This document shows positions 11,741 through 57,500 of a stretch of DNA of 64,000 bases, in pieces. The stretch lies in contig NIVC01001948.1 in NCBI GenBank assembly GCA_002269645.1, forward strand, positions 241,953 through 305,952. Direction: 5' to 3'. Every line of letters begins with the position of its first letter. Position 1 is the stretch's first letter. The DNA comes from Macrostomum lignano. Taxonomy: Eukaryota. Made by a program: the position numbers and the translations under genes. Under the pieces are notes generated by a model, which did no database searches, was not told the DNA's origin, and saw only the letters and a program-made list of their open reading frames with translations.

Positions 11741-11794
<54 letters not shown>

Positions 11795-26189: not shown

Positions 26190-26329
26190 GGCGACCGGAA
26201 CTGCATGCAAATCTGCAATTGCAAAAGTCAAACTTTGTTATTACTATGAGTAGGTTGACTGGATTATTTGTTTTTTTATTGAAGAAGTTAGATCTAAACT
26301 ATTAGTTAGAGGACTCAAATGGGGACCTT

Positions 26330-27749: not shown

Positions 27750-28628
27750 AGTATAGCATTTTGCAGTCAAGCCTGAACCGCGGGCATTCAAATTAGACGC
27801 TTGACCAGATCTCACTGCTGGCACAAATGCTATCTATGGCCTAGACAAAATCACACTGGTGGGCACTCAATTTAGACAAGGGGCATTCAAATTAGACAAG
27901 TTCTCAGGCGCATTGGCTGGGCAATTCAAGATCGTGTTGCATCTGTTGTCAGACAACCATTCTGTGAACCCTGAACTATGAAGATAAGAACAAGTTATAA
28001 CAAAGTAAGCATGTGTGAACAAACAAAACAGGGTGCTCAGCACATCAATGAACAAGAGTCTCACAAGAGTCTCATCTGATAGAGAATTCAAACGATGTCT
28101 TCATTTGCCAGACAGCGTGGGATGAAGCGGAGCGTGTGCTGATACCAGTGAACGCACTTCAGTGTAGTCACGTCATCCATCGCGATTTCCCCGCACCTCT
28201 GCAGCACCATCAGTCTCCATTGAATGGCAGTCATGTCAGGAGGCGGAACAGCCAATTCTCTCTGAACTTCAGGATTGGACAGCTGCCTCTTGACTGCTGA
28301 TTTAAAGGCACTGTGAGCCAGTTCAACTGGGTTCAGGAAAGGAGAGTAAGGTGGTAAGATCTTCAGTTCAATTCGACCAACCCACTCCTCCGGGATTTGC
28401 AATCCGTCGTGGATTGTCCATGGTCTTTCTCTCTGGCACACATAGACTTTCCGCTGCTTGTCTAATTTGAATGCCCATTGTCTAAATTGAGTGCCCGTCA
28501 GTGTGTTTCAGTTTGTGCCACAGACATAAAGTTCTGCTTGACTTGGGGATGGATTCTGAAATTTGGCTCTTCCCTTCTTGTCTAATTTGAATGCCCGCAG
28601 TTCAAACTTGACTACAAAATGCTATACT
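27750..28628 (-). mobile_element. Internally deleted IS630/Tc1-mariner transposon
   Basis: Long TIRs AGTATAGCATTTTG.AGTCAAG..TGAAC.GCGGGCATTCAAATTAGAC at both ends with inner GGGCATTCAAATTAGACAAG repeats; residual ORF 28088-28441 contains LPPYSPFLNPVE (DDE_3 third-acid motif); the ends can be read with TA flanks. Confidence 0.88.
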
Positions 28629-38306: not shown

Positions 38307-38444
38307 AGACCAACTGAATTTAGAATGACATTTTGAAGACAATCGACTGCCGAGTGTGATTTGAAGCTTAAAGGTCATTTGAAGCTAATAAATACACTTC
38401 TTTAATGGGTTTTCACCACTGTGTAACTTCCAGTGCCAAGTAGC

Positions 38445-38900
38445 TAGGGATTTTTGCTACTGGGGAATTCCTGCTACTGGGGATTTCCTGCTACTGGGGT
38501 ATTCCTGCTACTGGGGTATTCCTGCTACGGGGTATTATAGCTACTGGGGTATTCCTGCTACTGGGGTATTATAGCTACTGGGGTATTCCTGCTACTGGGG
38601 TTTTCCTGCTACTGGGGTATTCCTGCTACTGGGGTATTCCTGCTACTGGGGTATTCCTGCTACTGGGGTATTATAGCTACTGGGGTATTCCTGCTATTGG
38701 GGTATTCTTGCTACTGGAGTATTCTTGCTACTGGGGTATTCCTGCTAGTGGGGTATTATAGCTACTGGGGTATTCTAGCTACTGGGGTATTCCTGCTACT
38801 GGGGTATTCCTGCTACTGGGGTATTCCTGCTACTGGGGAATTCCTGCTACTAGGGTATTCCTGCTACTGGGGTATTCCTGCTAGTGGGGTATTCCTATAC
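38445..38900. repeat. 17-bp minisatellite (CTACTGGGGTATTCCTG)
   Basis: About 26 units between the convergent NPL and NuMA 3' ends. Confidence 0.95.
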
Positions 38901-39637
38901 GGTATCTGAGAATTCCTGCTGTCGTCAAAGTTTTAAGGGCCGCTGTTAGAGTAGATTAGTGTAAAAAATTCCATGAAAACCCGTCAGTAATGACGACAAT
39001 TTCAGTTTTAACAAAATGCATTACAACTAAAGCAGCACAGACAGAGTTTTAATGTATTTGTGTGCGTGCAAGCAAACTGACGTTTTGCTATTAGTAGCAA
39101 CAGCAACAATAAGGAAATATGATTTATGTAAAACAGCTTTTATTTGGTATTTGAGTGGACTATAAAATGTAAAATTAAAAAGTAACAGTTTATTTAAAGA
39201 TTATTTAGGGTATGGATATTTTAGCACTAAATAATTAATTCATAAATGCGCGTATTTAAAACGGACTTGCTGTAGAAAAGACGGATGCTTAACAAAATGC
39301 CCACAACAGTAGGTTTCTTTTATAATAAATAAAGCCAAGAAAGAAGCAACAGTGACAACGAAAATGCATGCTAAATTATATTAAACTACTATGAGTAATA
39401 AAAAGCAGTAGAAATAAACAAGGAAAACAGTTTGAACTGGGGAAATAGTACATACAGCACCAGTATGTTTTGTAAGCCAAAATGCAAACTTTTCAACTCG
39501 GAAAAGATGTTTAGAACAATAAGAAACAACAAAGGTTTTTTTATTCAAATCAATCAGAACTAAAATAGCCAACTACTACTGGTAGGCGACGCGGTATAAA
39601 ACAGTTCAGTTGCTATGGCAACGCACAGATTAATAAG

Positions 39638-42600
39638 TCAGTCGCCCATTACCAGTTTGCGTACAGTCTTAGCGCTGCTGCTGCTGCTGCTGCCGCTGCC
39701 ACCGCCTGCGGGTCGGCGAGGTCCCGGCCTGCCCGGGTTCATCTCGATGCTATAGACCAGGGTTTTCTTAGCTGGCACAACCGGTTCAGCCGAGCTAGAC
39801 GAAGCTGATAGAGAGCTGTTATTGTGCTGCTGCTGCCCAATGGCATGGCTGGAGCGATTCTCGCGTTCTGAGCCGCCGCTAGGCCAGCGCTGATGCTGCT
39901 GCGGCTGCTGTTGCTGCAACGTCGACATGGAAGCCGACGTATTTTTCGGCCTAGTAGAAGCGGCGGCCGATGTCGTCAACGCCAGTCTTGGCGCGGCAGA
40001 TTTCGGCGATTTGAACAGGCGCTGACGCTGAGGTGGCGGCGGCGGCTGCTGCTGCTGCTGCTGTTGCTGTTGAATTCCGCCAGCAGACAGGCGGTTACGA
40101 TCGCTCAGCACAGCGGCGGATGTCGACGACCATGTCGACGCTAATGTCGATGTCAGGGCTGACGTGGCGATGGTTGAAGTGGACCGACTTGCCACGGCGG
40201 ACGAAGCTGGGATTCAGTTTGAGGGGCAGCAAAATCAGTCTGCGAACATTGCACTGACACAAATTAACTGTCGAACGTACCTAAAGCTAAAATACCACTT
40301 ATGCCGCCGTTTTCTGATACGACTTTTCACCGCGTTGCTTCCCTGCTCTCTCTTCTCTCTCTCCCCTCTATCTTCTTCCCTTCCCCTCTCCCCTTCTCCC
40401 CCTTCCACCCCCCTCTCTTCCCTCCCCTCCCTTTCCTCTCCCCTCTCTTCCACCCAGGTATCACTTTTTTATCACTGAGGCTACAATGCCACTCACCAGT
40501 GGACTCAACAATAGACCTGGGCGTAACAATAGAACAATAGAATGAACCAACACAGGTCAAATATTAACAGGAGGGTCGTGACTTCGGGGTCAGAGCACTT
40601 TCTCACCCCCAATCACTCGATTGCAAACTTTGTCTCCATTGCTATCGAACAAGTTCTTAATAACAACAAAATCGAACTTAGGGAAGAGATCTGGAATAAA
40701 AAACTGGGGACTGACAAACCGCCGGGTACGAACATCAGGGTCGACAATCATCTCCGACCCATCCCATTGGTCCTTCCTTTTCACCCATCTACGGTCTGGC
40801 TCGCCAACGAGATAGCTAAAAACTTTGATAAGCTACAAAATAAACCAGGCTCCCGCATACTGCCCGCTTTTACACGGCAACGTAACTTACAGAGCCTCCT
40901 GGCTCCCAATAAGTCAAGTCTCAGCCAGGAAACCAGTAACTTACAGAGCCTCCTGGCTCCCAATAAGTCAAGTCTCAGCCAGGAAACCAGTAACTTACAG
41001 AGCCTCCTGGCTCCCAATAAGTCAAGTCTCAGCCAGGAAACCAGTAACTTACAGAGCCTCCTGGCTCCCAATAAGTCAAGTCTCAGCCAGGAAACCATTG
41101 AATCATTTTAACCAATGCGCTCATTTTACCCTATTGAAGTACAATATTTATTCACGTTTATTTCTTTCAATGATTGTACTCACAAATATCGATTTTTATG
41201 CTCCTACCCTACCCCCAATACCGAAATTTCATCTAATCGTATAATATCGTATATCGTACGAGTATAGTACTTCGAAATAACAAATTTTATATAATAAATA
41301 TACTGTGTCGATTAAAATTAATGGTGGAAAGCCACTGGGACAAGTTAAAGCTAGGCAAAACAGGGTTTTAAATGTACATCCCTCACATGTACAACTACTC
41401 ATCAATTTTATCAGACTAAGAAAAATAATACTTAAAAGACCAACTTGAATTGCATGACACACAGATTTTTTTGGCCTGACGAAGAGCCCAGAGGCTCGAA
41501 ACCGGTAGCCAATATTAAATTAATTATTTTTTTAAACACGCCGTGACCTCTCTTCTCTCTCTCTCTCTACCTCTCTCTCTCCCCTCCATCTTCTTTCCTT
41601 CCCCCCCTCTCTTTCCCCTCTATCTTCTTTCCTCCCCCCCTTTCTCTCCCCTCTATCTTCTTTCCCTCTATCTTCTTTCCTCCCCCCTCTCTCTCCCCTC
41701 TATCTTCTTCCCTTCCCCTCTCCCCTTCTCCCCTTCCACCCCCTCTCTTCCTTTCCCCTTCTCTTCCCCCCTCTTTTTACTTCTCCTCTCTTCGCTTCTT
41801 CCATCCCCCTCTCTTCCCCCCTCCCTTTCCTCTCCCATCTCATCCCCCTCCCTTTCCTCTCCCATCTCATCCCCCTCCCTTTCCTCTCCCATCTCATCCC
41901 CCCTCCCTTTCCTCTCCCATCTCATCCCCCTCCCTTTCCTCTCCCATCTCATCCCCCTCCCTTTCCTCTCCCATCTCATCCCCCCTCCCTTTCCTCTCCC
42001 ATCTCATCCCCCTCCCTTTCCTCTCCCATCTCATCCCCCTCCCTTTCCTCTCCCATCTCATCCCCCCTCCCTTTCCTCTCCCATCTCATCCCCCCTCCCT
42101 TTCCTCTCCCCTCTCTTCCACCCAGGGATCACTTTTTTATCACTGAGGCTACAATACCACTCACCAGTGGTCTCAACAATAGACCTGGGCGTAACGCTAG
42201 CAGTCTGAGTCTCAACCGGATACGAGCTGCGCAGCTGAGCCGGCTGCCGCTGATTCCTCTGCTGCAGTTCCGCGATACGCTTCCACTCAAGCAGGTGCGC
42301 GTCCTCGTCTTCGCAGGACAGCTGGCCGCCTTTACCGCCGCCGCCGCCACCGCCTGCGCCACCAGCAGCGGCTGAGCAGCCGTTATTACTAGCGTTATTA
42401 CTAGTGCTCAGAGCGAACGGTCTGCGATCAAACACTGGTGAAGCGGCCATGTTCACGTCGGAGTTGGCCCGCACCAGCTGGTGCACCCGGTTCGACTGCA
42501 GCGGCGGCGTTGTCGGCAACTGGCGCTGCTCGTCGGCAGGCTCCGGCGATTCAACAACTCCACCGTTGCGACGCTGCTGTGCCGAGCGGATGTTGGCGGC

Positions 42601-45600
42601 CTCCTCCAGTTCCTGGCATCTCACCAGCAGGCGCTCCTTCATCTCAGCTTCTTCGTTGCGCTCTTCGATGGCTTTTTTCAACGCCGCCTTTCTACGCTGA
42701 CAGGCCTCAACTAGGCTGGCCTGCTCAAGCTCCACCTGGTGGAGATTGGACCGCAGCTTGTGCGCCTTTGGGGTGGGATGGGGTGCAAAGCAACCATGGC
42801 ATAGAGAATCGTGATATGTACCAATAATCCATGGGACAATTCACTAAATCTTCTCTCACACAGGTACATAATTCCTGACACAAAACAAGAATTCCTGACA
42901 CAAACCAAGAATTCCTGACACATACCAATAATCGCTGACACAAACCAATAATCCCTGACACATACCAAGAATTCCTGACACAAACCAAGAATTCCTGACA
43001 AACCAAGAATCCCTGACACATACCAAGAATCCCAGACATATACCAAGAATCCCTGACACAAAACAAGAATCCCTGACACATACCAAGAATCCCTGACACA
43101 TACCAAGAATCCCTGACACATACCAAGAATCCCAGACATATACCAAGAATCCCTGACACAAAACAAGAATCCCTGACACATACCAAGAATCCCTGACACA
43201 TACCAAGAATCCCTGACATATACCAAGAATCCCTGACACAAAACAAGAATCCCTGACACATACCAAGAATCCCTGACACATACCAAGAATCCCTGACACA
43301 TACCAAGAATCCCTGAAACACAGAATCCCTGACACGAACCAAGAATCCCTGACACATGTCTAAAATCCCTGACACAAAACATAGAATCCCTGACACATGT
43401 CTAAAATCCCTGACACAAAACATAGAATCCCTGACACATGTCTAAAATCCCTGACACAAAACATAGAATTCCTGACACAAAACTAGAAACCCCGACAAAC
43501 CTCCGCCTTGGATGCCTTCAACTCCTCCTCCGCAGCCTCCAGCTCTTTAGTCAGCCTATCCGTCACGGCTTTAACCTCGCGTTGAACCTCTTCGCGGGCA
43601 GCTGCCGAGGCGCGCAGCTCGGCGCCGCTGCGCTGCCGATTGCTTCGATACTGCAGCTCCTGCAGCTGGTCCTGCAGCTCGGCCAGCTCCAGCTCCGACT
43701 TCGTTCGCAACTCGCGCAGCTTGTTGGCCGCTTCGGACTCCGCCTGCAGCCGATCGCTAGTGGTCGCGAGTTCGCGCCGGAGCCTGGCCGATTCGCGCTG
43801 CAACTCGTCCTGCTGGCTGGCCGCCAAGGCCAACCGATTGGACAGGCGATCGATCTCGGCATCTCGGCTGAGCAGCTCGTCTTCGCAATCGGCCAGGCGG
43901 CGCTGAAGGCTCTCGACTTTCCGCTGGGCTCGGTCGCGTTCCATGGCGATCGATTCCGACGCCTGCTCGGCCGCTTGGCGGGCCTGTTCGAGGTTATTAT
44001 GATTTATGATCAGGTATTGTTTGCGTTTGGAGTTTCCAGCATTGCATTTTTAGCTCAGGTTTTGCTCCAGAGACTTTTTTGGCGAAATCCTGACACATTT
44101 TACAGGGCAATTCTGGCTAAACCCCATCGGGGCTGGCCGCCAGTGCTGGACTGTCAGGCGTGGGGTGGAAGGTCCGCTGGCCACGGACACGAAAGCTGGA
44201 ATTACGGCCCCTCTGCTAGGGTTGACCCTGGTGGACCTGGTGGCAGGCTCGCCGACATGCCCTCTGCACACTCACGCGGCGACGCGGTGGTGCAAGGCCC
44301 CTGTTCTGTGGTGAGCGGGACATTGACAGCTGGCTGTGCCATGTTGCAGTCAGACCGTTCCCATAGGCCCAATGACCAGGTGACCCAGTTGGGCCGTCAA
44401 CAACAATCAGGGCCATGCTGACACATTTTTAGCTTCATACTGACACCTTTTCAGCGCCATCCTGACACATTTTTAGCTTCATACTGACACCTTTTCAGCG
44501 CCATCCTGACACATTTTTAGCTTCATACTGACACCTTTTCAGCGCCATCCTGACACATTTTTAGCTTCATACTGACACCTTTTCAGCGCCATCCTGACAC
44601 ATTTTTAGCTTCATACTGACACATTTTTAGCTTCATACTGACACATTTTTAGCTTCATACTGACACCTTTTCAGCGCCATCCTGACACCCTTTTCAGCGC
44701 CATCCTGACACTTTTTAGCGCCATTCTGATACCTTTTTTAATGCCATACTGACACTTTTTCAGGGCCAGGTTGACACATTTCTCAGCTTCATTCTGACAC
44801 ATTTCTCAGCTTCATCCTGACACATCTCTCAGCTTCATTCTGACACCTTTTTTAGCTTCATTCTGACACATTTCTCAGCTTCATCCTGACAAATCTCTCA
44901 GCTTCATTCTGACACCTTTTTAGCTTCATTCTGACACATTTCTCAGCTTCATCCTGACAAATCTCTCAGCTTCATTCTGACACCTTTTTAGCTTCATCCT
45001 GACACATTTCTCAGCTTCATTCTGACACATTTTTAGCTTCATTCTGACACATTTCTCAGCTTCAATCTGACACATTTCTCAGCTTCATTCTGACACATTT
45101 CTCAGCTTCAATCTGACACATTTCTCAGCTTCATTCTGACACATTTCTCAGCTTCGTCCTGACACTTTTCTCAGCTTCATCCTGACACATTTCTCAGCTT
45201 CATCCTGACACATTTCTCAGCTTCATCCTGACACATTTCTGAGCTTCATTCTGACACTTTTCTCAGCTTCATCCTGACACATTTCTCAGCTTCATCCTGA
45301 CACATTTCTCAGCTTCATCCTGACACATTTCTGAGCTTCATTCTGACACTTTTCTCAGCTTCATTCTGACACATTTCTGAGCTTCATTCTGACACATTTT
45401 TAGCTTCATTCTGACACTTTTCTCAGCTTCATTCTGACACCTTTTTTAGCTTTATTCTGACATCTTTTAGCGCCTTGTTGGCACATTTTCAGCACCACCC
45501 TGTGACACCCTAATACGAGTGTAAAAGCAATCCTCCAATTGTAAATCAGCTCACTTTGACGATCTCAGCGTCAACCCTCGCCTTCTCCTCCGTCGCGGTG

Positions 45601-48600
45601 TCCAGCAGGGCCTCCCGCTCAGCCAGGCGTTTGTCCTTCTCGGACAGGCTGTCACGCATCAGGCGCAGCTCCTCCTGGAGATCTTTGCATCGGCGCTCGA
45701 GATTTTCGGCCAGCCGGCGAGAGTCCAACAGTTCGGCGCTGGGTTCGGGTTCGGATTCGACGGCGGCGGCTGCCGTAGCGGCTGCGGTAGCGGCATCGGC
45801 TTCCAGTTGACAGATTCGCTCTTTGGCATTGTCGAGTTCGCATTGGATGTTGGTGAGCTCGCCTTCGAGTCGGAGTTGAGTGTCCGCGGCGATCACCTGC
45901 TGGGCTTCCAGCTGCTCGTGCAGGTCCGCAACTTTGCGTTGATTGGCCTGGGGATGTTGGAGATTTTGTTGAGTTGAGTTGTGGGACTATGAGTGCTTTG
46001 AATATTCTGAGCTGCACAATGGGGATATTCCAAACTACACAATGGGATATTCCAAGCTACACAATGGGATATTCCAAGCTACACAATGGGATATTCCAAG
46101 CTACACAATGGGATATTCCAAACTACACAATGGGATATCCCAAGCTACACAATGGTATATTCCAAGCTACACAATGGGATATTCCAAGCTACACAATGGG
46201 ATATCCCAAGCTACACAATGGGATATCCCAAGCTACACAATGGGATATTCCAAGCTACACAATGGGATATTCCAAGCTACACAATGGGATATTTCAAGCT
46301 ACACAATGGGATATCCCAAGCTACACAATGGGATATTCCAAGCTACACAATGGGATATTCCAAGCTACACAATGGGATATTCCAAGCTACACAATGAGAT
46401 ATTTCAAGCTACACAATGGGATATTCCAAACTACACAATGGGATATTCCAAGCTACACAATGGGATATTCCAAACTACACAATGGGATATTCCAAGCTAC
46501 ACAATGGGATATTTCAAGCTACAAGCTCACCTTCACCGCAGCATCGTACGCAGCCTTCAAGTCGGCCAGTTCAGCCAGAGCCTGATCTCTGGCAGCGCGC
46601 AGTCCTTCAGCGAATTGGCGCTTCTCATTTAGCGCCGATTCGAATTCGGCGCGCGCTTCAGCTTGGCGCCGGTCGGCGTCCTCCATAGCGGCGGCGCAGC
46701 GCTCCCTGGTGTCGTGCGCCTCCTGACTGCCGGCTTGCCGGGCCAATTGAAGCTCTTCAACAGTGTGCGCCAGCTCGGCGGCCAGCTGATCCCGATCCTG
46801 CTCAAGGCAACGCTTCACTTCGTCTAGTTCGCGTTCTCGAGTTTCGAAGTTTTTGCGCGAATTAGCCAGCTCTGCTTTGACCGACGCTAGGGCCGTTTTG
46901 TGCTCCTCAGCCTGCATAAGCAGCTCGGTTTGTAACTCTTTCACTCGTTCGTTGGCGCTGTCCAACTGCGATTCCACGAACTTGTAGGCCTCTTGCATTT
47001 GTTCAATGAGCTGCAAGCGTGTGTTGTGTATGGCTTAGTGACGTATGAGCCACACTTGCCAGGGTGACATGTTGGCGGCAGATAAAGTGGGATTTGCATC
47101 GAAGGAAGGAAGGGGAAACATTGTGAAGGGAGATTGTGAAGGGAGGGAGAAGGTGATAAAGAGAGGGAGATAAAAGCGAGGGTAAAGATGGTGATGCGAG
47201 GGGAAAGATGATGGAAGGGAGGGGAAAGATAATGGAAGGAGGAAGATGATAGTAGGGGAAGAAGATCAACGGAGAGGAAAGATGGTAAAGGGAGGGGAAA
47301 GATGGTAAAGGGAGGGGAAAGACGGTAAAGGGAGGGGAAAGATGGTAAAGGGAGTGGAAAGATGGTAAAGGGAGTGGAAAGATGGTAAAGGGAGGGGAAA
47401 GATGGTAAAGGGAGTGGAAAGATGGTAAAGGGAGTGGAAAGATGGTAAAGGGAGTGGAAAGATGGTAAAGGGAGGTGAAAGATGGTAAAGGGAGTGGAAA
47501 GATGGTAAAGGGAGGGGAAAATTGGTAAAGGGAGGGGAAAGATGGTAAAGGGAGAGTAGAGATGGTAAAGGGAGGGGAAAGATGGTAAAGGGAGGTGAGG
47601 GGAACCAGTGTAAAAGTGAGCAATAGGATCAACAATCAATTCCAGCAGATCCGCAGGCGTCACTCACAGTTTTAGTTCTCTCAAACTGCTTCTCCAGCCG
47701 TTCCACACTGGTAGTCCTATTTTTCATTTCGGTCAGCGCGGCATCCTTAGCGGCCGTCTCGGCCTCCAGTTTGCTGGCCAACTCCCGCAGCCTGTCAGCT
47801 TCAGCCTGCAGATCGGCAACCCGATCGTTGGCAGCGGAAGCCTCCAACTGAGCAGCGTCCAGTTGGAGCTCCTTGCTGGCCAGCTCCTTGCGCAAGTTGT
47901 TCATTGTAGACTCGATAGAGGCGACAGATTTCTTAGCGGCCGCTTCGCGATCGGCGGCTGCATTCTCGGCGGCCTGCTTGATTTTCTCTGCCTCTTCCAA
48001 TGCCTCCTTGGAGGTGGCGTCGGCTTCAAGGCGAATCTGCAGCATCTCCATCCGCGCAATGCCCAAATCAGCGTCCAGCTTGTTTCGTTCCTCGCGAACT
48101 TTGGCGGCATCAGCTCTGGCTGCTTCCAGCTCCTGTTCCAAGTAGTAGATCTTCTTCTCCGTGACGCCGAACAGGGTCTCGGCCGAGTCTGGCTCGGCCG
48201 CCGCAGCCATGGCCGAATCGTCCAATCTGGAGCTCATCTCGGCCAGCTGTTGGCGCATCTCGGCGCAACGGCGCTCGGCCGCCTCGGCCGAATCTTGGGC
48301 CTCCTTTTTGGCCTGCAACAGCCGGTTGATTTCGCTGTGGGGGGGGGGTAGGCGGCGATGATTCTCATGCATACCGTGAGATTTTGTGATGATTCTCATG
48401 CATACCGTGAGATTTTGTGATGATTCTCATGCATACCGTGAAATTTTGTGATGATTCTCATGCATACCGTGAGATTTTGTGATGATTCTCATGTATACAA
48501 TGAGATTTTGTGATGATTCTCAATGTTCTCATGTATACACTGAGATTATGTAATGATTCTCATGCATACAGTGAGATTTTGCGATGATTCTCATGTATAC

Positions 48601-51600
48601 AGTGAGATTTTGTGATGATTCTCATGCATACCGTGAAATTTTGTGATGATTCTCATGCATACCGTGAGATTTTGTGATGATTCTCATGTATACAATGAGA
48701 TTTTGTGATGATTCTCAATGTTCTCATGTATACACTGAGATTATGTAATGATTCTCATGCATACAGTGAGATTTTGCGATGATTCTCATGTATACAGTGA
48801 GATTATGTAATGATTCTCATGCATACAGTGAGATTTTGCGATGATTCTCATGTATACAGTGAGATTTTGTGATGATTCTCAATGTTCTCATGTATACACT
48901 GAGATTATGTAATGATTCTCATGCATACAGTGAGATTTTGCGATGATTCTCATGTATACAGTGAGATTTTGTGATGATTCTTATGTATACAGTGAGATTT
49001 TGTGATGATTCTCATATAAACAGTGAGATTTTGTGATGATTCTCATGTATACAGTGAGATTTTGTGATGATTCTCATATACACAGTGAGATTTTGTGATG
49101 ATTCTCATGCATACAGTGAGATTTTGTGATGATTCTCATGCATAGTCGGTGTGATTTTGATATGCCAATTAACTATAGCCGAATACTCACGAATTAGCGC
49201 GCATCAACTCGTCAGTGAGGTGTCCAACGTGCTCTTCGGCTTCCCGTCGAGTACAGCTGCCCTGCCTGTTGGCCTGCAGTCGTTCCAGCGTCGCTTTCAT
49301 CGCCTCCCGTTCGTGCATCAGCCTGTCGAACTCCTGCTCCAGGTAGCTGTACCGATCGGCATACCGGCTCATCTCTTGTAGCGACTCGGTCACGTGACCC
49401 AGCTGCTCGGCCTGCTCAGCTAATCGACGATTTTCCTCTCGCAGCTCGGCCAGTTCGTTTGATTGGTGGCCGAGCTCGGACCGGCTGCGGCGGAGACGGT
49501 CTTCCAGATCGGAGCAGTCGCGCTCCCGTCTGGCCAGCTGGTTCTGCGATGCGCATGAGAATGAATAAAAATACCAACGCAAAGGTAATTCTGCCGATTC
49601 TGTTTGACTCCTGAACACATTACATGCGCGCCAATGCTGTACTCATAGAAACGCTCAGAGCTGGTGAAGGGAGGGGAAAGATGATAAAGAGGGGTAAAGA
49701 TTATGAAGGGAGAAAGATGATTAAGGGAAAGATGTTTAAGGGAGAAGAAAGATGATTAAGGGAGAAAGATGCTTAAGGGAGGAGAAAAGATGATTAAGGG
49801 AGGGAAAGATGATTAAGGGAGGAGAAAGATGATCAAGGGAGGAGAATGATGATTAAGGGAGGGAAAGATAATTAAGGGAGAAAGATGATCAAGGGAGGAG
49901 AAAGATGCTTAAGGGAGGGAAAGATTATTAAGGTAGAGAAAGATTGTGAAGGCAGGGGAAAGATACTAAAGGGAGGATAACGATGATGAAGGGAGGGGAA
50001 GATTGTGAAGAGAGGTGAAAGATGATGAAGTAAGCACAGCGGTGTACAGCTCACACAGGGTGTACAGCTCACACAGGGTGTACAGCTCACACAGGGTGTA
50101 CAGCTCACACAGGGTGTACAGCTCACACAGGGTGTACAGCTCACACAGGGTGTACAGCTCAGGCAGGGTGTACAGGTCACACAGGGTGTAGAGCTCACAC
50201 AGGGTGTACAGCTCACACAGGGTGTACAGCTCACACAGGGTGTACAGCTCACACAGGGTGTACAGCTCACACAGGGTGTACAGCTCACACAGGGTGTACA
50301 GCTCACACAAGGTGTACAGCTCAGGCAGGGTGTACAGGTCACACAGGGTGTACAGCTCACACAGGGTGTACAGCTCACACAGGGTGTACAGCTCACACAA
50401 GGTGTACAGCTCAGGCAGGGTGTACAGGTCACACAGGGTGTACAGCTCACACAAGGTGTACAGCTCAGGCAGGGTGTACAGGTCACACAGGGTGTAGAGC
50501 TCACACAGGGTGTAGAGCGACCCTTTGACTTTTTAATCAGGGTGCCCACATGGGTTGTAGAAACATTAATAACAGCAAACCTGAGCATCAAGCAGCTGCT
50601 GCTCGAGCATGTCCTTCATAGTCATCTCCGACTGCAGCCGATGATTCAATTGTTGAATCGCCTCCGACTCGGCAGTCGATGCCGTCCATGTCGCCGCCGC
50701 GGAAGTTGACATAGACACCGAGCCAGCTACCGAGTTCCTCTGTCGGCAGCGTCGGCGAACCAGAGGCGAAGCGGCCAGGTGCAGCTTCAGCGGTGAGCAG
50801 GTAGCGGCAGTGGCAGCGTCCAGAGACCCGCCAGTTGGACCAGCGGCAGCAGCGGCGGCCGCAGCGGCGGAAGCAGCCGACGGGAACAGCACCCGAGCCA
50901 GTTGAGGACTAGCCGAAGACTTCTCCGCTGCTGCACCAGGATGATCTTCATCGTCAGCGGTAGAATCCGTGTGCAAAGCTCGAAGCTGATCCAGGCTTAG
51001 GCAGCCGTCCTCGGTGTCTAACAGCTGTCGGGTTAGCGACATCACAGTGCGCTGACTGGCTGCGCCAAGGCGGTCGGCCGCGGCGGCCACGCGAGCCTGC
51101 GAGCTGCCTGTCTGCAGCCAGGCGCCCAGCAACAGCAGGCAGAGGCGCAGGGCCTGCGTGCATATTTAATCCGTTAGTTCTGAACTAACTGACTCCCACT
51201 GACTCACTAGTAATCCCACTGACTCACTAGTAATCCCACTGACTCACTAGTAATCTCACTGACTCACTAGTAATCCCACTGACTCACTAGTAATCCCACT
51301 GACTCACTAGTAATCCCACTGACTCACTAGTAATCTCACTGACTCACTAGTAATCCCACTGACTCACTAGTAATCCCACTGACTCACTAGTAATCCCACT
51401 GACTCACTAGTAATCCCACTGACTCACTAGTAATCCCACTGACTCACTAGTAATCCCACTGACTCACTAGTAATCCCACTGACTCACTAGTAATCCCACT
51501 GACTCACTAGTAATCCCACTGACTCACTAGTAATCCCACTGACTCACTAGTAATCCCACTGACTCACTCACTGGGAATCCCACTGATTCACTAGTAATCC

Positions 51601-53806
51601 CACTGACTCACTCACTGGGAATCCCACTGATTCACTAGTAATCCCACTGATTCACTAGTAATCCCACTGACTCACTCACTGGGAATCCCACTGATTCACT
51701 AGTAATCCCACTGATTCACTAGTAATCCCACTGACTCACTCACTGGGAATCCCACTGATTCACTAGTAATCCCACTGACTCACTCACTGGGAATCCCACT
51801 GATTCACTAGTAATCCCACTGACTCACTCACTGGGAATCCCACTGATTCACTAGTAATCCCACTGACTCACTAGTAATCCCACTGACTCACTGGGAATCC
51901 CACTGACTCACTAGTAATCCCACTGACTCACTGGGAATCCCACTGACTCACTAGTAATCCCACTGACTCACTGGGAATCCCACTGATTCACTAGTAATCC
52001 CACTGACTCACTAGTAATCCCACTGACTCATTAGTAATCCCACTGACTCACTAGTAATCCCACTGACTCACTAGTAATCCCACTGATTCACTAGTAATCC
52101 CACTGACTCATTCATTGGGAATCCCACTGATTCACTAGTAATCCCACTGACTCACTCACTGGGAATCCCACTGATTCACTAGTAATCCCACTGATTTACT
52201 CACTGGGAATCCCACTGATTCACTAGTAATCCCACTGACTCACTCACTGGGAATCCCACTGATTCACTAGGAATCCCACTGACTCACTAGTTATCCCACT
52301 GATTCACTAGTAATCCCACTGATTTACTCACTGGGAATCCCACTGATTCACTAGTAATCCCACTGACTCACTCACTGGGAATCCCACTGATTCACTAGGA
52401 ATCCCACTGACTCACTAGTTATCCCACTGATTCACTAGTAATCCCACTGACTCACTGGGAATCCCACTGACTCACTAGTAATCCCACTGACTCATTCACT
52501 GGGAATCTCACTGATTCACTAGTAATCCCACTGACTCACTCACTAGTAATCCCACTGACTCATTCACTGGGAATCTCACTGATTCACTAGTAATCCCACT
52601 GACTCATTCACTGGGAATCCCACTGATTCACTAGGAATCCCACTGACTCAGTCACTGGGAATCCCACTGATTCACTAGTAATCCCACTGACTCATTCACT
52701 GGGAATCTCACTGATTCACTAGTAATCCCACTGACTCATTCACTGGGAATCCCACTGATTCACTAGGAATCCCACTGACTCATTCACTGGGAATCTCACT
52801 TGATTCACTAATAATCCCACTGACTCATTCACTGGGAATCCCACTGATTCACTAGTAATCCCACTGACTCACTCACTAGTAATCCCACTGACTCATTCAC
52901 TGGGAATCTCACTGATTCACTAGTAATCCCACTGACTCACTCACTAGTAATCCCACTGATTCACTAGGAATCCCACTGACTCATTCACTGGGAATCTCAC
53001 TTGATTCACTAATAATCCCACTGACTCATTCACTGGGAATCCCACTGATTCACTAGGAATCCCACTGACTCATTTACTGGGAATCTCACTGATTCACTAG
53101 TAATCCCACTGACTCATTCACTGGGAATCCCACTGATTCACTAGGAATCCCACTGACTCATTCACTGGGAATCTCACTTGATTCACTAATAATCCCACTG
53201 ACTCACTCACTGGGAATCCCACTGATTCACTAGGAATCCCACTGACTCATTCACTGGGAATCCCACTTGATTCACTAGTAATCCCACTGACTCACTCACT
53301 GGGAATCCCACTTGATTCACTAGTAATCCCACTGACTCATTCACTGGGAATCCCACTGATTCACTAGTAATCCCACTGACTCATTCACTGGGAATCCCAC
53401 TGATTCACTCATTAGGAATCCCACTGACCAAAATAAGCTAAACAGATGCCATGTAAAATCTTACCTGTAATTCGAATCCAGAATCCTGGGCCATCAGGCA
53501 CTCCCAATTAACCAGTTCAACAATTCGAACCCGATAGAACGCGTCCAGGAACTCTTCGATAGCCGCAAATCGAGCCATTGGCGTATCGATTGCAGCCGTT
53601 TGGGGCGCCGGAGCCGCGCAACAGCCGAGACTGACGCAGAGGTCGCGCAATAAGCGACCATCGGCCAAGTCTGACTCTGTTGGCGGTCTGTTGCCCTTGC
53701 CAGAGGAGGGAGAAACAGTGCCGGATAATAGCTGGCCAATCCAGGCCAACAGGCAGGACCGCCTAGCGGGGTCTACTGGGGCAGTGGTGTCCTCGTCCTG
53801 AAGCAT
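39638..53806 (-). CDS. NUMA1: Nuclear mitotic apparatus protein (NuMA) orthologue, ~1475 aa; exons 53465-53797 (or 53806), 50581-51153, 49191-49543, 47668-48334, 46531-47010, 45555-45947, 43501-43983, 42165-42735, 39638-40206
   Basis: N-terminal hook/CH-like head (CLLAWIGQL, DLADGRLL, RFAAIEEFL, LLDTEDG, SPL), long coiled coil, and tail SCEDEDAHLLEWKRIAELQQRNQRQPAQLRSSYPVET matching recalled human TCQDEPEQLDDWNRIAELQQRNRVCPPHLKTCYPLES. All 8 introns GT-AG, phases 0,0,2,0,0,0,0,1 close the frame. Confidence 0.85.
40881..41097. repeat. 54-bp x4 tandem duplication inside the Penelope ORF (SNLQSLLAPNKSSLSQET)
   Basis: Four near-identical in-frame copies. Confidence 0.95.
41471..41512 (+). ncRNA. 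Minimal type I hammerhead ribozyme
   Basis: TTGGC-CTGACGA-A-GAGCC(CAGA)GGCTC-GAAAC-CG-GTA-GCCAA: stem I TTGGC/GCCAA, core CUGAnGA and GAAA, stem II GAGCC/GGCTC, palindromic stem III ACCGGT, predicted cleavage after A41507. Confidence 0.85.
41545..42120. repeat. Polypyrimidine (+ strand) low-complexity tract with a 26-27 bp unit (CCCCTCCCTTTCCTCTCCCATCTCAT)
   Basis: Visible C/T tract; a shorter version lies at 40340-40455. Confidence 0.9.
42862..43495. repeat. 20-bp minisatellite (CCCTGACACATACCAAGAAT), NuMA intron 7
   Basis: About 30 units. Confidence 0.95.
44418..45480. repeat. 23-bp minisatellite (CTGACACATTTCTCAGCTTCATT), NuMA intron 6
   Basis: About 45 units. Confidence 0.95.
46012..46521. 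repeat. 22-bp minisatellite (AATGGGATATTCCAAGCTACAC), NuMA intron 5
   Basis: About 23 units. Confidence 0.95.
47110..47600. repeat. Purine-rich 20-bp repeat (GGGAGGGGAAAGATGGTAAA), NuMA intron 4
   Basis: Tandem units visible. Confidence 0.9.
48357..49143. repeat. 31-bp minisatellite (GATTCTCATGCATACCGTGAGATTTTGTGAT), NuMA intron 3
   Basis: About 25 units. Confidence 0.95.
49665..50030. repeat. Purine-rich degenerate ~20-bp repeat (AGGGAGAAAGATGATTA), NuMA intron 2
   Basis: Visible degenerate units. Confidence 0.8.
50040..50518. repeat. 18-bp minisatellite (GGGTGTACAGCTCACACA), NuMA intron 2
   Basis: About 26 units; accounts for the CTPCVS ORF. Confidence 0.95.
51190..53428. repeat. 20-bp minisatellite (CCCACTGACTCACTAGTAAT) with 24-bp variants, NuMA intron 1
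   Basis: About 100 units, evolving into an alternating 20/24-bp higher-order pattern. Confidence 0.97.
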
Positions 53807-54565
53807 TTTACAGTGTGATTAAGCTGAAGCAATATGGGATCCCCAGTCCTGAAGCATTTTACAGTGTGATTAAGCTGAGGCAGGATGGGATCCCCAGTCC
53901 TGAAGCATTTTACAGTGTGATTAAGCTGAGGCAGGTTGGAATCCCTAGTCCTGAAGCATTTTACAGTGTGATTAAGCTGAGGCAGGTTGGGATCCCCAGT
54001 CCTGAAGCATTTTACAGTGTGATTAAGCTGAGGCAGGATGGGATCCCCAGTCCTGAAGCATTTTACAGTGTGATTAAGCTGAAGCAATATGGGATCCCCA
54101 GTCCTGAAGCATTTTACAGTGTGATTAAGCTGAGGCAGGTTGGGATCCCCAGTCCTGAAGCATTTTACAGTGTGATTAAGCTGAGGCAATATGGGATCCC
54201 CAGTCCTGAAGCATTTTACAGTGTAATTAAGCTGAGGCAGGTTGGAATCCCTAGTCCTGAAGCATTTTACAGTGTGATTAAGCTGAAGCAATATGGGATC
54301 CCCAGTCCTGAAGCATTTTACAGTGTGATTAAGCTGAGGCAGGTTGGGATCCCTAGTCCTGAAGCATTTTACAGTGTGATTAAGCTGAGGCAGGTTGGAA
54401 TCCCTAGTCCTGAAGCATTTTACAGTGTGATTAAGCTGAAGCAATATGGGATCCCCAGTCCTGAAGCATTTTACAGTGTGATTAAGCTGAGGCAGGTTGG
54501 GATCCCTAGTCCTGAAGCATTTTACAGTGTGATTAAGCTGAGATAGGATGGAATCCCTAGTCCTG
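53795..54565. repeat. 51-bp x15 tandem array containing the NuMA acceptor and ATG
   Basis: CTGAAGCATTTT recurs every 51 bp from 53798 to 54512. Confidence 0.95.
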
Positions 54566-57500
54566 ACCTGACTTTAAATCCAATATGCTAAATTCCCTGG
54601 ATCTAGAGTTCTATTCTAATTATGGCAACAGCAATGACCCACAAATTTATGACCCACAAAATTGTTGTTGGAAAGTATAAAATATCAGCTTTAATGTGTC
54701 AAAAAATCATCCTTTTATGCCTTTAAAAAGGTAATCTTTTTCTATTTGAGCTAGGGTTATAGCTCTACAATATGTAATATTATAGTATATACTATATATA
54801 TATACTATACTATACTACTATACTATTATATATATATATATTATATGTACTATATGAACTATAGTACTATATTGAACCTCCATTTTCAGGGAGCACATGT
54901 CCATCAACATATGAACCACAAGTTATTTTTTATATATCTGGCTCATTGCGGAGACAAGAGGCTAATTCAAAATGCTAGCATGAGAATGAACAATTAAGTC
55001 AATGACACCAACACTATATTGGGGACATTTAATAAGGAGTTTTTTGGTATTACATTATATAAACCTAACTACCTAGAATAATTTATGAGTTTCTGCTAAT
55101 GTAATAAATATGATAGGCTATATATATAACTTTAAGTTCTTTTGAAATTAGTATTGTTATCATTCTATTAGTTTATTCAAATACTTTAGAGGAGCATGCA
55201 AGATGCAAGTAAAGTGTATATAAAGGGCCCCTCCCGATTTTTTACTAAAAAATAGTCACCGATTAACCAATTTAAATCCACGCCAAAACTAAGAAATATA
55301 ATTTGTTTTACTACTCATATTTTTTATAATATTTCGCGCGAGTTAATTTTTGTTTTAAATCATCATAAAAATTAGTATAAATAGAAGCGTTTTCGGTGGA
55401 GGGAGGACCAACCTCGCGCATTGCGGTTCAATAATACAAGTTGATAGCAATTAATAAGAGTTCCAAGAAAATAAGAATTGAAGAAGTGTTTTCTGTATTC
55501 ATTCCTTTAAGAAGTAAGAGTGAAGTAGACGGAGGTGTGTACCATATATACTACTAAGAAGGAAAGTGTTGAGTAGTAAGAGAATACGAAGTAGATCTGA
55601 AGTCATACGCATAAGAATAACCGGAGGCTATGACCCTCTGATCTCAGTAACGCCCAAGGACTTGCAAAGTACATGGAATACATATACTAGTATAGCCAAT
55701 AGATTACTCAGGCCAAAAGTACAGTGAACGCTACCGGAATCAGAATAAACGCTACCAGAATAACAGAGGAATAAAATCTTTAAGAGCTAATAGTTTTCTA
55801 AGAATAATACTCAGACTAAATACTCAGACTAAATACTAAGATATATACTCAGATCAATTCTAAGAAACATTTCTTGGATTATTCTAAGATTGATAAACTC
55901 ATAATTTATTAATAGGATAATCCTGGTGGCAGCTACCAATATTTATAAGAATAGAAGTTTAGCCCTTTGACAACTTTAGTGACAACTGTGGAATCATTTA
56001 AAGAGACAGAAGAAACACACCTGTGACAACTTGGTGGTAGCTAGTAAGGCTAAACAAAATAATAATTAAGAGCCCTGGGACAGCTTTTAGTAACAACAGT
56101 GGGATATTATTAAGAAGGAAGAATCACCCCTGTTACATGTAGTCTGATGAAAGTAGCAGTTAATTACTTATTCTAACAATTTTACTAATTTTTAGTATAT
56201 TTGATATACACTAAAAATGTCTTTCAAAATTAATTTTAAATAAAGTTCTTTAGGTGATGAGCCCGTTGCATCAAAAAGACCATGTAAAAAACTAAAAGGT
56301 AAGTAAATTGCAATGCCATTGGTGTGCATTAAATGATTATTCAAATAGGCTGTCAATATATTCACCATAACATGCTCTTAAGAGTGTTTGAAGTTCAGCT
56401 CTGGTTTGAATTGACTTATTTCAATAAGTTGACAATCTTGTTTGGCCAGTCATTAGCACCAAATTGTATCTATGGACTATGTCCTCTATAGGTATACTAG
56501 ATAATAATACTTTAAAATCAAATCAAATTAAAATCAAATACTTTAAAATCAAATCAAAATAGAATTTTATATAGAGATGGCTATTACTATTATATTGGAT
56601 CTAATAACCACCAACCAAGTAGTTTTTTGTTTTATTTTCTTTCAGAAGTACAATTGCTTTAATAGACTCTTTACTCTCTTAGTTTCACATGCTACTCAGT
56701 ATTTGTCAATAGCCCTTGGCACTGCTACTAATGTGGCTATACCAATAGTCCAATACCAATGATTCTAAGTGAAACTACTACTGCTGACTCAATAAGTATA
56801 AGTCTATTCTAATGAATATATATATTATGATGCCATTACTTAACAGTTAAGAAAAAGGCTATTTTTTCTCTAATCGATCACATAGATAGATAGAGACAGA
56901 CCATTTTTAGTATATAGGATGGAGTTGGCAAACATGGAGCATTGACTAATTGCATAGATGTGCCAATTAGTCGATGGAAAAGACAATGCTATCATACATC
57001 AACCATTAAAAGTCATTGTTTAAAGAGCACTTTTGCAATAAGGCTATATTTAGTATACTTTTTAATGAAGGCTCAATTATACAGTTATACATGTTCTGCT
57101 CATTTTACTTGCTCATTATTACTATAAAAATAACCATTTTACTATTTATACAGTCACCATAACAATTAGGCCTAATAACTGCATAAGGCTAAAAAATATA
57201 ATATATAATATATAATTTCAATTTTTTATTTCCTTTTTGTTTTTTAAAACTATTTTTATAGATTGAAAAATAATAATCTAGAACATAGTCATACATATTG
57301 CAAACTTTAAATACTAAACTAAAGTCCAGAAAAGAACATTGGATAGGGGCCTACACACACTTGAACTAAGTCTAAGTCTAATGGTTCTTAACCTGTGAGT
57401 CGCAACCCTTAGTGGAGTTGCTACATTGCCTGACCATTTTCTAGGGGTCACAGCAAGAAATATATGAGTAAGTCATACTTAATTATGCATTATATTGATT

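What the first reader, a model, noticed from the sequence alone, without database searches (positions are those of the whole stretch)
39638..53806. A sequence-recognisable NuMA orthologue in a probable flatworm
The fly (Mud) and nematode (LIN-5) counterparts of NuMA are highly diverged. This protein keeps a vertebrate-like head and tail around a shorter coiled coil (~1475 aa versus ~2100 in human) and would probably be auto-annotated only as coiled-coil or myosin-like. It is relevant to spindle orientation in stem cells and to centrosome loss in planarians.
Basis: partly seen in the sequence, partly recalled or inferred. Interest (0 to 1): 0.7.

Follow-up and report, generated by a model that had tools for sequence, protein, structure and literature searches.

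The report
NuMA gene of the flatworm Macrostomum

Summary
On the minus strand, 53806..39638, nine GT-AG exons encode a 1486-aa protein. It is 99.8% identical to GenBank PAA72665, "hypothetical protein BOX15_Mlig021455g1" of Macrostomum lignano, whose annotation derives from RNA-seq. A second genomic copy keeps every exon, splice site and the reading frame, with 32 synonymous against 10 non-synonymous changes, while intron lengths differ up to 14-fold.

The NuMA reading is supported, mainly by the tail. Residues 1248-1284 (CEDEDAHLLEWKRIAELQQRNQRQPAQLRSSYPVETQ) take human NuMA's LGN-binding peptide (PDB 6HC2) as best hit in the PDB. They match the equivalent exon of a nemertean gene at 57% identity.

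The head is not directly "vertebrate-like". It has no Pfam or PDB hit, and it matches the human NuMA hook no better than the HOOK3 hook. It is clearly homologous to a Tubulanus protein that belongs to Pfam HOOK_N_NuMA and sits just upstream of a coiled-coil plus NLM gene. A coiled coil of about 880 residues lies between head and tail. No HOOK or CCDC88 signature was found.

M. lignano has centrosomes, so the link to planarian centrosome loss is indirect. Verdict: new member of a known kind, modest interest.

The parts
53465..53806 (-). Exon 1 (aa 1-114): start codon and the first two-thirds of the hook-type head. The hook is aligned from aa 13, at 53770.
   Evidence: ORF and donor TTACAG|gtaaga. 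Identical in PAA72665. Homologous to the Tubulanus HOOK_N_NuMA protein. There is a possible SL trans-splice acceptor cttcag|GAC at 53797; the SL ends in ATG, and the NCBI 'partial' proteins start at (D)EDTT.
50581..51153 (-). Exon 2 (aa 115-305): last helices of the hook (to about aa 165, at 51001), an Ala/Ser-rich linker, and the start of the coiled coil (about aa 276, at 50670).
   Evidence: Acceptor ...cacgcag|GCC and donor GCTCAG|gtttgc. The segment FELQALRLCLLLLGAWLQ aligns with ELELAKMTMLLLYHS of human NuMA and FEIGKCVMLLLGAAIQ of Tubulanus. Heptad periodicity rises from about aa 270.
49191..49543 (-). Exon 3 (aa 306-423, ends in phase 2): coiled coil.
   Evidence: Conserved in copy L002 at 99.7%.
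47668..48334 (-). Exon 4 (aa 423-645): coiled coil.
46531..47010 (-). Exon 5 (aa 646-805): coiled coil.
45555..45947 (-). Exon 6 (aa 806-936): coiled coil.
43501..43983 (-). Exon 7 (aa 937-1097): coiled coil.
42165..42765 (-). Exon 8 (aa 1098-1298): end of the coiled coil (about aa 1160, at 42577), a disordered Gly/Ser/Pro stretch, then the LGN-binding/NLM motif.
   Evidence: The annotated acceptor is 42765 (ccccaaag|GCG); an alternative in-frame acceptor lies at 42735. The donor is CCACTG|gtgagt.
42205..42315 (-). [quoted passage not shown]
   Evidence: The best hit in the whole PDB is human NuMA chain 6hc2_B (E=5.9e-4); 3ro2_B also hits. tblastn to the Tubulanus exon CDDEPPFHDLEWGRLNELQRRNTLCPPHMKSSYPVETQ gives E=3.9e-9 at 57% identity. 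Positions follow the domain table in PMC8047419 and PMC12505299.
39638..40206 (-). Exon 9 (aa 1298-1486 plus stop): basic, Ser/Thr/Gln-rich disordered tail.
   Evidence: Acceptor atcccag|CTT, phase 1. Net charge of the post-NLM tail is +15. Conserved with in-frame indels in L002.
39740..39769 (-). Distal tail motif KKTLVYSIEM (aa 1444-1453).
   Evidence: It resembles PRKSCAFEIVM in the last coding exon of the Tubulanus locus and, from my memory of the human sequence, RRQSMAFSIL. This is a resemblance by eye and was not tested statistically.
40424..40532 (-). Intronic 109-nt duplicate (95% identity) of the last 36 nt of exon 8, its donor site, and 73 nt of intron.
53795..54566 (.). A 51-bp minisatellite (15 copies) that abuts and includes the first 12 nt of the CDS. 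Each unit carries AAAATGCTTCAG|GAC, i.e. a copy of the start codon and the acceptor.

Best explanation
This is the Macrostomum lignano orthologue of NuMA (vertebrate NUMA1, fly Mud, worm LIN-5). It is a dimeric coiled-coil adaptor for cytoplasmic dynein.

Shown here: the gene is real, spliced as modelled, under purifying selection, and present in at least three near-identical copies in this polyploid genome. The protein has four parts:
- a helical N-terminal domain of about 165 aa, homologous to a NuMA-type hook domain;
- an Ala/Ser-rich linker;
- a heptad-periodic coiled coil of about 880 aa;
- a disordered basic tail that carries the LGN/Pins-binding acidic stretch fused to the NLM motif.

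Inferred from what is established for NuMA, Mud and LIN-5:
- The hook and adjacent coiled coil bind dynein light-intermediate chain and dynactin.
- The coiled coil dimerises the protein.
- The EDE...W..IAELQQRN segment inserts into the TPR channel of the worm's LGN/Pins protein at the cell cortex.
- The NLM and basic tail bind microtubules.

The protein would therefore focus spindle poles and anchor pulling forces that orient the spindle. In this animal that would apply to neoblast divisions and to spiral cleavage.
For: Gene reality:
- The nine-exon GT-AG model matches the RNA-seq-derived GenBank protein at 1479 of 1482 residues.
- The second copy keeps all exons and splice sites, with 32 synonymous against 10 non-synonymous changes.

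Tail:
- The top PDB hit is the human NuMA LGN-binding peptide 6hc2_B, E=5.9e-4. The aligned segments are 'scededahllewkriaelqqrn' and 'tcqdepeqlddwnriaelqqrn'.
- The same motif, with an identical SSYPVETQ end, occurs in a Tubulanus exon: tblastn E=3.9e-9.
- It corresponds to the minimal LGN-binding region plus the NLM in the published domain maps.

Head:
- An exhaustive phmmer search of 1.84 billion representative proteins gave only one hit that is neither a copy of this gene nor a repetitive-protein match. That hit is Tubulanus XP_074650242: E=1.4e-6, pairwise 3e-13, 43 bits against a best of 9.9 bits in 3000 shuffles.
- That protein belongs to Pfam PF21670 HOOK_N_NuMA (E=1e-13, 51.8 bits against a cut-off of 27). 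Its score against HOOK_N PF19047 is only E=0.17.
- In the Tubulanus genome it lies directly upstream, on the same strand, of a 1977-aa coiled-coil gene that ends with the NLM exon. The same head-coil-tail order therefore exists there.

Coiled coil: heptad periodicity z is mostly 2-9 (dipping below 2 in some windows) from about aa 270 to 1150, with almost no Pro or Gly.

The post-NLM tail is basic, with net charge +15.
Against: - The head is not recognised directly as a NuMA hook. It has no Pfam hit at E<=10 and no PDB hit.
- BLASTP against the human NuMA hook gives only E=0.089.
- hhalign and shuffle tests do not separate the NuMA hook from the HOOK3 hook.
- Both AlphaFold runs failed (pLDDT 43-45), so the fold comparison is void.
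- No classical NLS is present. As far as my memory of the human sequence goes, the Thr-Pro CDK site next to the distal motif is also absent.
- The CC1-box-like and Spindly-like motifs were not tested.
- No functional data exist. No partner protein (LGN/Pins, dynein LIC) from M. lignano was examined.
Confidence: 0.9

Rival explanations
1. It is a HOOK- or CCDC88 (girdin/daple)-family dynein adaptor rather than NuMA. On this reading the hook-like head is of the HOOK type and the tail motif is a coincidence.
For: UniProt names two versions of this protein 'HOOK_N domain-containing protein'. hhalign of the head profile against the HOOK3 hook gives E=0.0062 over 45 columns, which is similar to the NuMA hook score. 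In the shuffle test the head is equally weak against both.
Against: No hit to Pfam HOOK_N (PF19047) or to any HOOK or CCDC88 family, for the head or the whole protein, at E<=10. BLASTP of the head against the HOOK3 hook gives E=47. The exhaustive search found no HOOK or CCDC88 protein among 1.84 billion. The only relative is a Pfam NuMA-hook member. As far as I know, HOOK and CCDC88 proteins have no NLM/LGN-binding motif, and this protein's motif takes human NuMA as best PDB hit.
Confidence: 0.03
2. It is a lineage-specific coiled-coil protein that shares only short linear motifs (the NLM and a hook-like helix bundle) with NuMA through convergence or exon shuffling. On this reading it is not an orthologue.
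For: Detectable similarity to vertebrate NuMA is confined to about 37 aa, plus about 10 aa in the tail. The head is at noise level against human NuMA. The coiled coil shows no specific similarity.
Against: Head and tail motifs occur in the same order and orientation as in the Tubulanus locus and in human NuMA. Twenty-three of 40 aligned tail positions are identical to Tubulanus, including W..(I/L).ELQ.RN and SSYPVETQ, which is far more than a minimal linear motif needs. Mud and LIN-5 are accepted orthologues on the same or weaker evidence.
Confidence: 0.05
3. It is a decaying or non-functional duplicate in a redundant polyploid genome.
For: At least three near-identical copies exist. The introns are swamped by unstable minisatellites.
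Against: The ORF is intact in both copies examined. Indels are only in multiples of three. Synonymous changes outnumber non-synonymous ones 32 to 10, and all splice sites are kept. The gene models derive from RNA-seq.
Confidence: 0.02

Closest known systems
Vertebrate NuMA (human NUMA1, 2115 aa)
   Same: The same three-part plan: an N-terminal hook-type head, a long coiled coil, and a disordered C-terminal tail. The tail segment CEDEDAHLLEWKRIAELQQRN aligns with human TCQDEPEQLDDWNRIAELQQRN, which is the minimal LGN-binding region running into the NLM. The acidic (Q/E)DE triplet that occupies the LGN TPR channel is present as EDE.
   Different: The coiled coil is about 880 aa rather than about 1500. 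The head is not detectably similar in direct searches. The N-terminal half of the long LGN-binding domain (human 1861-1880) has no counterpart. No NLS is evident. The Thr-Pro CDK site next to the distal motif appears absent, judged against my memory of the human sequence. The tail is rich in poly-Gln and Ser/Thr low-complexity sequence.
Tubulanus polymorphus (nemertean) NuMA-like locus: XP_074650242 plus the adjacent 1977-aa gene
   Same: It is the closest detectable relative of the head (36% identity by phmmer, E=1.4e-6 library-wide; 33% by BLASTP). It has the NLM at 57% identity with the same SSYPVETQ end, the same order on one strand, and a distal tail motif of the type (K/R)(K/R)x(S/T)-hydrophobic-(A/V)(F/Y)xI.
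   Different: The Tubulanus head scores above the Pfam HOOK_N_NuMA threshold and the Macrostomum head does not. The Tubulanus coiled coil is much longer. Its NLM exon ends right after ...YPVETQ, whereas the Macrostomum exon runs on for 13 more codons. NCBI splits the Tubulanus locus into two gene models.
Drosophila Mud and C. elegans LIN-5
   Same: They are invertebrate NuMA orthologues, recognised mainly by the NLM and by binding to Pins or GPR-1/2. Mud also has an InterPro-detected hook domain and an EDE triplet in its Pins-binding domain.
   Different: According to PMC12505299, sequence conservation between vertebrates and invertebrates is obvious only in the NLM and ends abruptly N-terminal to it. 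Here the conservation extends about 12 residues further N-terminal into the LGN-contacting stretch (C-EDE-D..LLEW). I did not align the Mud or LIN-5 sequences themselves.
HOOK1-3 / CCDC88 hook-domain dynein adaptors
   Same: They share the general plan of an N-terminal hook/CH-like helical domain followed by a coiled coil. There is weak similarity in the last hook helices.
   Different: No Pfam HOOK_N or HOOK match was found. As far as I know, those families have no NLM or LGN-binding tail.

Membership tests
NuMA / Mud / LIN-5 | NLM (NuMA-LIN-5-Mud) motif in the C-terminal tail | tested here: met
   Residues 1258-1284, WKRIAELQQRNQRQPAQLRSSYPVETQ. The PDB-wide best hit is human NuMA 6hc2_B, E=5.9e-4. 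tblastn to the Tubulanus NLM exon gives E=3.9e-9 at 57% identity. The motif definition comes from PMC8047419 and PMC12505299.
NuMA / Mud / LIN-5 | LGN/Pins-binding segment, with an acidic (Q/E)DE triplet, immediately N-terminal to and overlapping the NLM | tested here: met
   CEDEDAHLLEW aligns with human CQDEPEQLDDW inside the crystallised LGN-binding peptide. The EDE triplet is the same as in Mud. This shows sequence only; binding was not tested.
NuMA / Mud / LIN-5 | N-terminal NuMA-type hook domain (Pfam PF21670 HOOK_N_NuMA) | tested here: inconclusive
   Direct tests gave no Pfam hit at E<=10 and no PDB hit. BLASTP against the human hook gives E=0.089, and the shuffle test gives p~0.03, the same as for HOOK3. 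The indirect route is strong: clear homology to Tubulanus XP_074650242 (E=1.4e-6 over 1.84 billion proteins; pairwise 3e-13), which passes the PF21670 threshold. Structure prediction failed.
NuMA / Mud / LIN-5 | Long central coiled coil between the globular head and the disordered tail | tested here: met
   Heptad periodicity z is mostly 2-9 (below 2 in some windows) across about aa 270-1150. Charged residues plus Gln are 40-55% of the sequence and Pro/Gly are close to 0%.
NuMA / Mud / LIN-5 | Basic microtubule-binding C-terminal region after the NLM | tested here: inconclusive
   The post-NLM tail has net charge +15 and is disordered and Ser/Thr-rich. The distal motif KKTLVYSIEM resembles one in Tubulanus.
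NuMA / Mud / LIN-5 | Localisation to spindle poles and the mitotic cortex; a role in spindle orientation and pole focusing | not testable with these tools
   This needs imaging and RNAi in M. lignano.
Vertebrate-type NuMA specifically | NLS between the two microtubule-binding domains (nuclear localisation in interphase) | tested here: not met
   There is no cluster of three or more K/R residues in the tail. The review states that the NLS is not conserved in LIN-5 or Mud either.
HOOK / CCDC88 | HOOK_N domain (Pfam PF19047) and a HOOK/CCDC88 coiled-coil or C-terminal family match | tested here: not met
   No such Pfam hit for the head or the whole protein at E<=10. BLASTP of the head against the HOOK3 hook gives E=47. 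The exhaustive library search returned no HOOK or CCDC88 protein.

The most novel reading that the evidence does not exclude
An early-branching flatworm with centrosomes and spiral cleavage keeps a NuMA whose LGN-contacting stretch and NLM are near-vertebrate in sequence, and a nemertean shares this. The contiguous LGN-binding/NLM module would then be ancestral to Bilateria, rather than a vertebrate-plus-hemichordate feature as recently stated. The exhaustive head search also found no counterpart in any other flatworm. NuMA may therefore have been lost, or have diverged beyond recognition, in the acentrosomal neoophoran flatworms (planarians, flukes, tapeworms) along with centrosomes and oriented spiral cleavage.
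Probability: 0.25. Interest if true: 0.6.

Novelty: new member of a known kind. Interest (0 to 1): 0.3.

Why it matters
NuMA is the hub that couples dynein to spindle poles and to cortical polarity cues. Outside vertebrates, flies and C. elegans it is rarely named, because only a short motif is conserved. Naming the M. lignano gene is a useful annotation: the gene is present in three copies and none of them is labelled NuMA.

M. lignano is the one flatworm with working transgenesis and RNAi by soaking. It keeps its centrosomes and spiral cleavage. The gene therefore gives a practical way to study spindle orientation in neoblasts and early embryos, and a baseline for asking what happened to this machinery in acentrosomal planarians and parasitic flatworms.

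The gene also shows that the LGN-contacting stretch next to the NLM is conserved in at least two spiralian phyla. This qualifies a recent statement that invertebrate conservation stops at the NLM. It does not reveal a new mechanism.

Tried and rejected
(1) I searched the 5.8-billion-protein index with the whole protein. It returned only M. lignano's own proteins.

(2) I searched with the 244-aa tail. That search was wasted. A short query without low-complexity sequence around the NLM would have been better.

(3) I searched the index with a profile of the Macrostomum and Tubulanus heads. It returned only the Tubulanus protein.

(4) Pfam scans of the head, the tail and the full protein gave nothing relevant.

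(5) phmmer and profile searches of the head against the PDB did not find the NuMA hook 6QJA, although that entry is in the library.

(6) AlphaFold2 on the head alone and with the two-sequence alignment gave pLDDT 43 and 45. The Foldseek search of that model is therefore meaningless: its best E-value is 2.6, and CH-domain proteins appear only at E of 7-8.

(7) hhalign of the head profile against the human NuMA hook gave E=0.0085 over 132 columns. Against the HOOK3 hook it gave E=0.0062 over 45 columns. This does not discriminate.

(8) My first model used the acceptor at 42735. The RNA-seq-based annotation uses 42765, which adds 10 aa, and I adopted that.

(9) Donors nearer to the end of the NLM (42217, 42196, 42185) were rejected for the wrong phase or a poor consensus. 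42165 (CTG|gtgagt) fits acceptor 40206 and the annotation.

(10) P0002 ('RING-type domain-containing protein') and P0010 (1745 aa) are frame-shifted or read-through mispredictions, not paralogues with a different architecture.

(11) P0004, a 459-aa hit in the head search, is a repetitive Ala-rich protein and not a homologue.

(12) Literature searches for NuMA or NUMA1 together with planarian, flatworm, Macrostomum or the gene identifier found no paper describing a flatworm NuMA.
Full report
**What is there**

The window is eukaryotic DNA. GC-rich exons sit between AT-rich or repeat-filled spacers. On the minus strand between 53806 and 39638, a series of long open segments encodes first a helical N-terminus, then hundreds of residues of Glu/Leu/Ala/Arg-rich sequence, then a Ser/Gln/Pro-rich end.

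I listed all GT and AG sites at the segment borders and joined the segments in frame. This gave a nine-exon model with canonical junctions throughout. A search of the 5.8-billion-protein index returned GenBank PAA72665, [quoted passage not shown]. That protein differs from my model at one junction: it uses the acceptor at 42765 instead of 42735, adding 10 residues. With that acceptor my model is 1486 aa and equals PAA72665 except for three substitutions.

**Are the junctions real?**

The GenBank annotation of assembly Mlig_3_7 was produced from a genome-guided RNA-seq transcriptome (PMC5730564). The junctions are thus transcript-derived.

The protein cluster contains three GenBank copies (PAA72665, PAA55371, PAA62350), as expected for this polyploid, redundant genome. 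I fetched the locus of PAA55371 (L002) and compared it with the window:
- All nine exons are present at 96-100% nucleotide identity.
- Every GT and AG is kept and the ORF is intact.
- Indels are multiples of three.
- Codon changes are 32 synonymous to 10 non-synonymous, roughly dN/dS of 0.1.
- Intron lengths differ greatly. Intron 1 is 2311 bp here and 168 bp there. Intron 5 is 583 bp here and about 2950 bp there.

This is the signature of a functional, spliced coding gene.

**The tail**

A phmmer search of exon 8's product against every PDB chain gave human NuMA as the best hit (6hc2_B, the LGN-binding fragment, E=5.9e-4). The shorter peptide 3ro2_B was also found. The alignment pairs scededahllewkriaelqqrn with tcqdepeqlddwnriaelqqrn.

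In the published domain maps this is the minimal LGN-binding region (human 1900-1926) running into the NLM motif (1922-1957), inside microtubule-binding domain 1 (PMC8047419). The acidic triplet that fills the LGN/Pins TPR channel (QDE in human, EDE in fly Mud; PMC12505299) is EDE here.

The rest of the motif...QRQPAQLRSSYPVETQ, matches an exon in the nemertean Tubulanus polymorphus (...TLCPPHMKSSYPVETQ). tblastn of the whole Macrostomum protein against that locus gives E=3.9e-9 at 57% identity over 40 residues.

After the motif the tail is disordered, rich in Ser, Thr and Gln, and basic (net +15). It has no classical NLS. A distal motif, KKTLVYSIEM, resembles PRKSCAFEIVM in the last Tubulanus exon. 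From my memory of the human sequence it also resembles RRQSMAFSIL. I did not test this statistically.

**The head**

- Residues 1-186 hit no Pfam family, although Pfam holds PF21670 HOOK_N_NuMA.
- They hit no PDB chain, although the human NuMA hook 6QJA is in the library.
- BLASTP against the human hook gives a colinear 72-residue alignment at E=0.089.
- In a shuffle test the head scores 1.1 bits against the NuMA hook (87 of 3000 shuffles do as well) and 0.4 bits against the HOOK3 hook (127 of 3000).
- hhalign does not discriminate either.

An exhaustive phmmer search of 1.84 billion representative proteins found only one hit that was neither a copy of this gene nor a repetitive-protein match (E=1.4e-6). 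It is XP_074650242, an "uncharacterized protein" of 184 aa from Tubulanus polymorphus. The pairwise E-value is 3e-13, and the score is 43 bits against a maximum of 9.9 bits in 3000 shuffles. That protein is a clear member of PF21670: E=1e-13, 51.8 bits against a cut-off of 27. It scores only E=0.17 against HOOK_N. It aligns with the human NuMA hook over 111 residues at E=1e-5.

In the Tubulanus genome this gene lies directly upstream, on the same strand, of a gene for a 1977-aa product with no Pfam hit. That product is almost all coiled coil and ends with the NLM exon. The nemertean NuMA has evidently been split into two gene models.

The Macrostomum head is therefore a NuMA-type hook by transitive homology and by shared architecture, not by direct resemblance to vertebrates. 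Both AlphaFold runs (single sequence, then a two-sequence alignment) gave pLDDT of 43-45, so the fold search is uninformative. The predicted secondary structure is all-helical with about eight helices before residue 165. That is compatible with a hook/CH fold but proves nothing.

**The middle**

Windows of 56 residues show strong 3.5-residue periodicity of Leu/Ile/Val/Met/Phe. The z-score is mostly 2-9, dipping below 2 in some windows, from about residue 270 to 1150. Pro and Gly are almost absent and charged residues plus Gln make up 40-55%. This is a coiled coil of about 880 residues, against about 1500 in human NuMA.

**Rivals**

- No HOOK_N or HOOK family hit.
- BLASTP against the HOOK3 hook gives E=47.
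- No HOOK or CCDC88 protein was found among 1.84 billion.
- As far as I know, those families have no such tail motif.

UniProt's name "HOOK_N domain-containing protein" for two versions of this protein reflects a generic hook-domain call.

A convergent-motif explanation is unlikely. Head and tail occur in the same order as in Tubulanus and human, and 23 of 40 aligned tail positions are identical to Tubulanus. A pseudogene is excluded by the selection signature and by expression.

**Mechanism**

By homology, the protein should work as follows:
- It dimerises through the coiled coil.
- It binds dynein light-intermediate chain and dynactin through the hook and the first part of the coil.
- It binds the TPR domain of the worm's LGN/Pins orthologue through residues 1248-1270.
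- It binds microtubules through the NLM and the basic tail.

Together these would focus spindle poles and transmit cortical pulling forces. All of these steps are inferred; none was tested here.

**Context and novelty**

I found no open-access paper that describes NuMA in any flatworm. None of the database names says NuMA. The finding is therefore a new member of a known family, not a new kind of thing.

M. lignano has centrosomes in dividing neoblasts and develops by spiral cleavage, unlike planarians (PMC6119866; PMC4799839).

One point has some wider interest. PMC12505299 states that the LGN-binding domain is recognised in vertebrates and one hemichordate, and that invertebrate conservation ends abruptly N-terminal to the NLM. 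Here, and in Tubulanus, conservation continues about 12 residues further into the LGN-contacting stretch.

Whether other flatworms keep this gene could not be tested.

**Start codon**

The GenBank proteins are "partial" and begin at (D)EDTT. The genomic sequence reads AAAATGCTTCAG|GACGAG, so a good acceptor lies right after the ATG. The M. lignano spliced leader ends in ...TTGCATG (PMC8629364). Trans-splicing at 53797 would therefore supply an in-frame ATG and give MDEDTT... instead of MLQDEDTT.... This is an inference and was not checked against reads.

Noticed in passing
window 40207-53464 (the eight introns of the gene); compare L002: Almost every intron is filled by its own minisatellite array with a period of 18-54 bp. 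For example, 51194-53409 covers 96% of intron 1, 48357-49144 covers 92% of intron 3, and 46002-46523 covers 90% of intron 5. The unit differs between introns. The homeologous copy has the same exons, but its intron lengths differ up to 14-fold. Several units (introns 2, 4, 8, and also 16312-17382) share a purine-rich GGGAG/GAAAGATG core.
   Followed up: partly
window 53795-54566: A 51-bp minisatellite of 15 copies runs right up to, and includes, the first 12 nt of the coding sequence. Each unit repeats AAAATGCTTCAG|GAC, so it carries a copy of the start codon and of the likely spliced-leader acceptor. The SL ends in ATG, which would explain why the GenBank proteins are 'partial' and start at (D)EDTT.
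   Followed up: partly
window 40424-40532 vs 42092-42200: A 109-nt segment covering the last 36 nt of exon 8, its donor site and 73 nt of intron is duplicated at 95% identity 1.67 kb further into the same intron. This creates a second potential donor. The 13 codons of exon 8 after ...YPVETQ are absent from the Tubulanus exon, which ends exactly there.
   Followed up: partly
L001 10001-19836 (Tubulanus polymorphus OZ123230.1): The nemertean NuMA orthologue appears to be split by NCBI into two gene models. One is a 184-aa hook-only protein (XP_074650242, 'uncharacterized'). The other is an adjacent 1977-aa coiled-coil protein that ends with the NLM exon at 18313-18432.
   Followed up: partly
window 38009-39653: UniProt A0A1I8HCV3 (1745 aa) extends this gene past its stop. 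It uses a donor at 39653 and reads antisense ORFs of the neighbouring DHDPS-like gene, so it is a chimeric misprediction. A0A1I8FCF6 ('RING-type domain-containing protein', 859 aa) is a frame-shifted version of the same gene.
   Followed up: yes
window 649-38306: Neighbouring genes, by Pfam: a DnaJ C-terminal fragment (649-1194, minus); a single-exon short-chain dehydrogenase (9364-10101, plus); an ankyrin-repeat protein with poly-Gln (11230-12105, minus); a VPS9-domain protein (21866-22972, minus); ribosomal protein eL13 (25566-26231, minus); a DDE_3 transposase remnant (28088-28441, minus); and a DHDPS / N-acetylneuraminate-lyase-like gene in two exons (36932-37702 and 37962-38306, plus).
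   Followed up: partly
window 16001-18600: This stretch has extreme strand asymmetry (GC skew 0.56, AT skew 0.46). It is made of tandem arrays that read as long artefactual ORFs in several frames (PSPSSLP... and GAPAPRGASTKGRQHQ...). These are probably intergenic or intronic satellites rather than genes.
   Followed up: no
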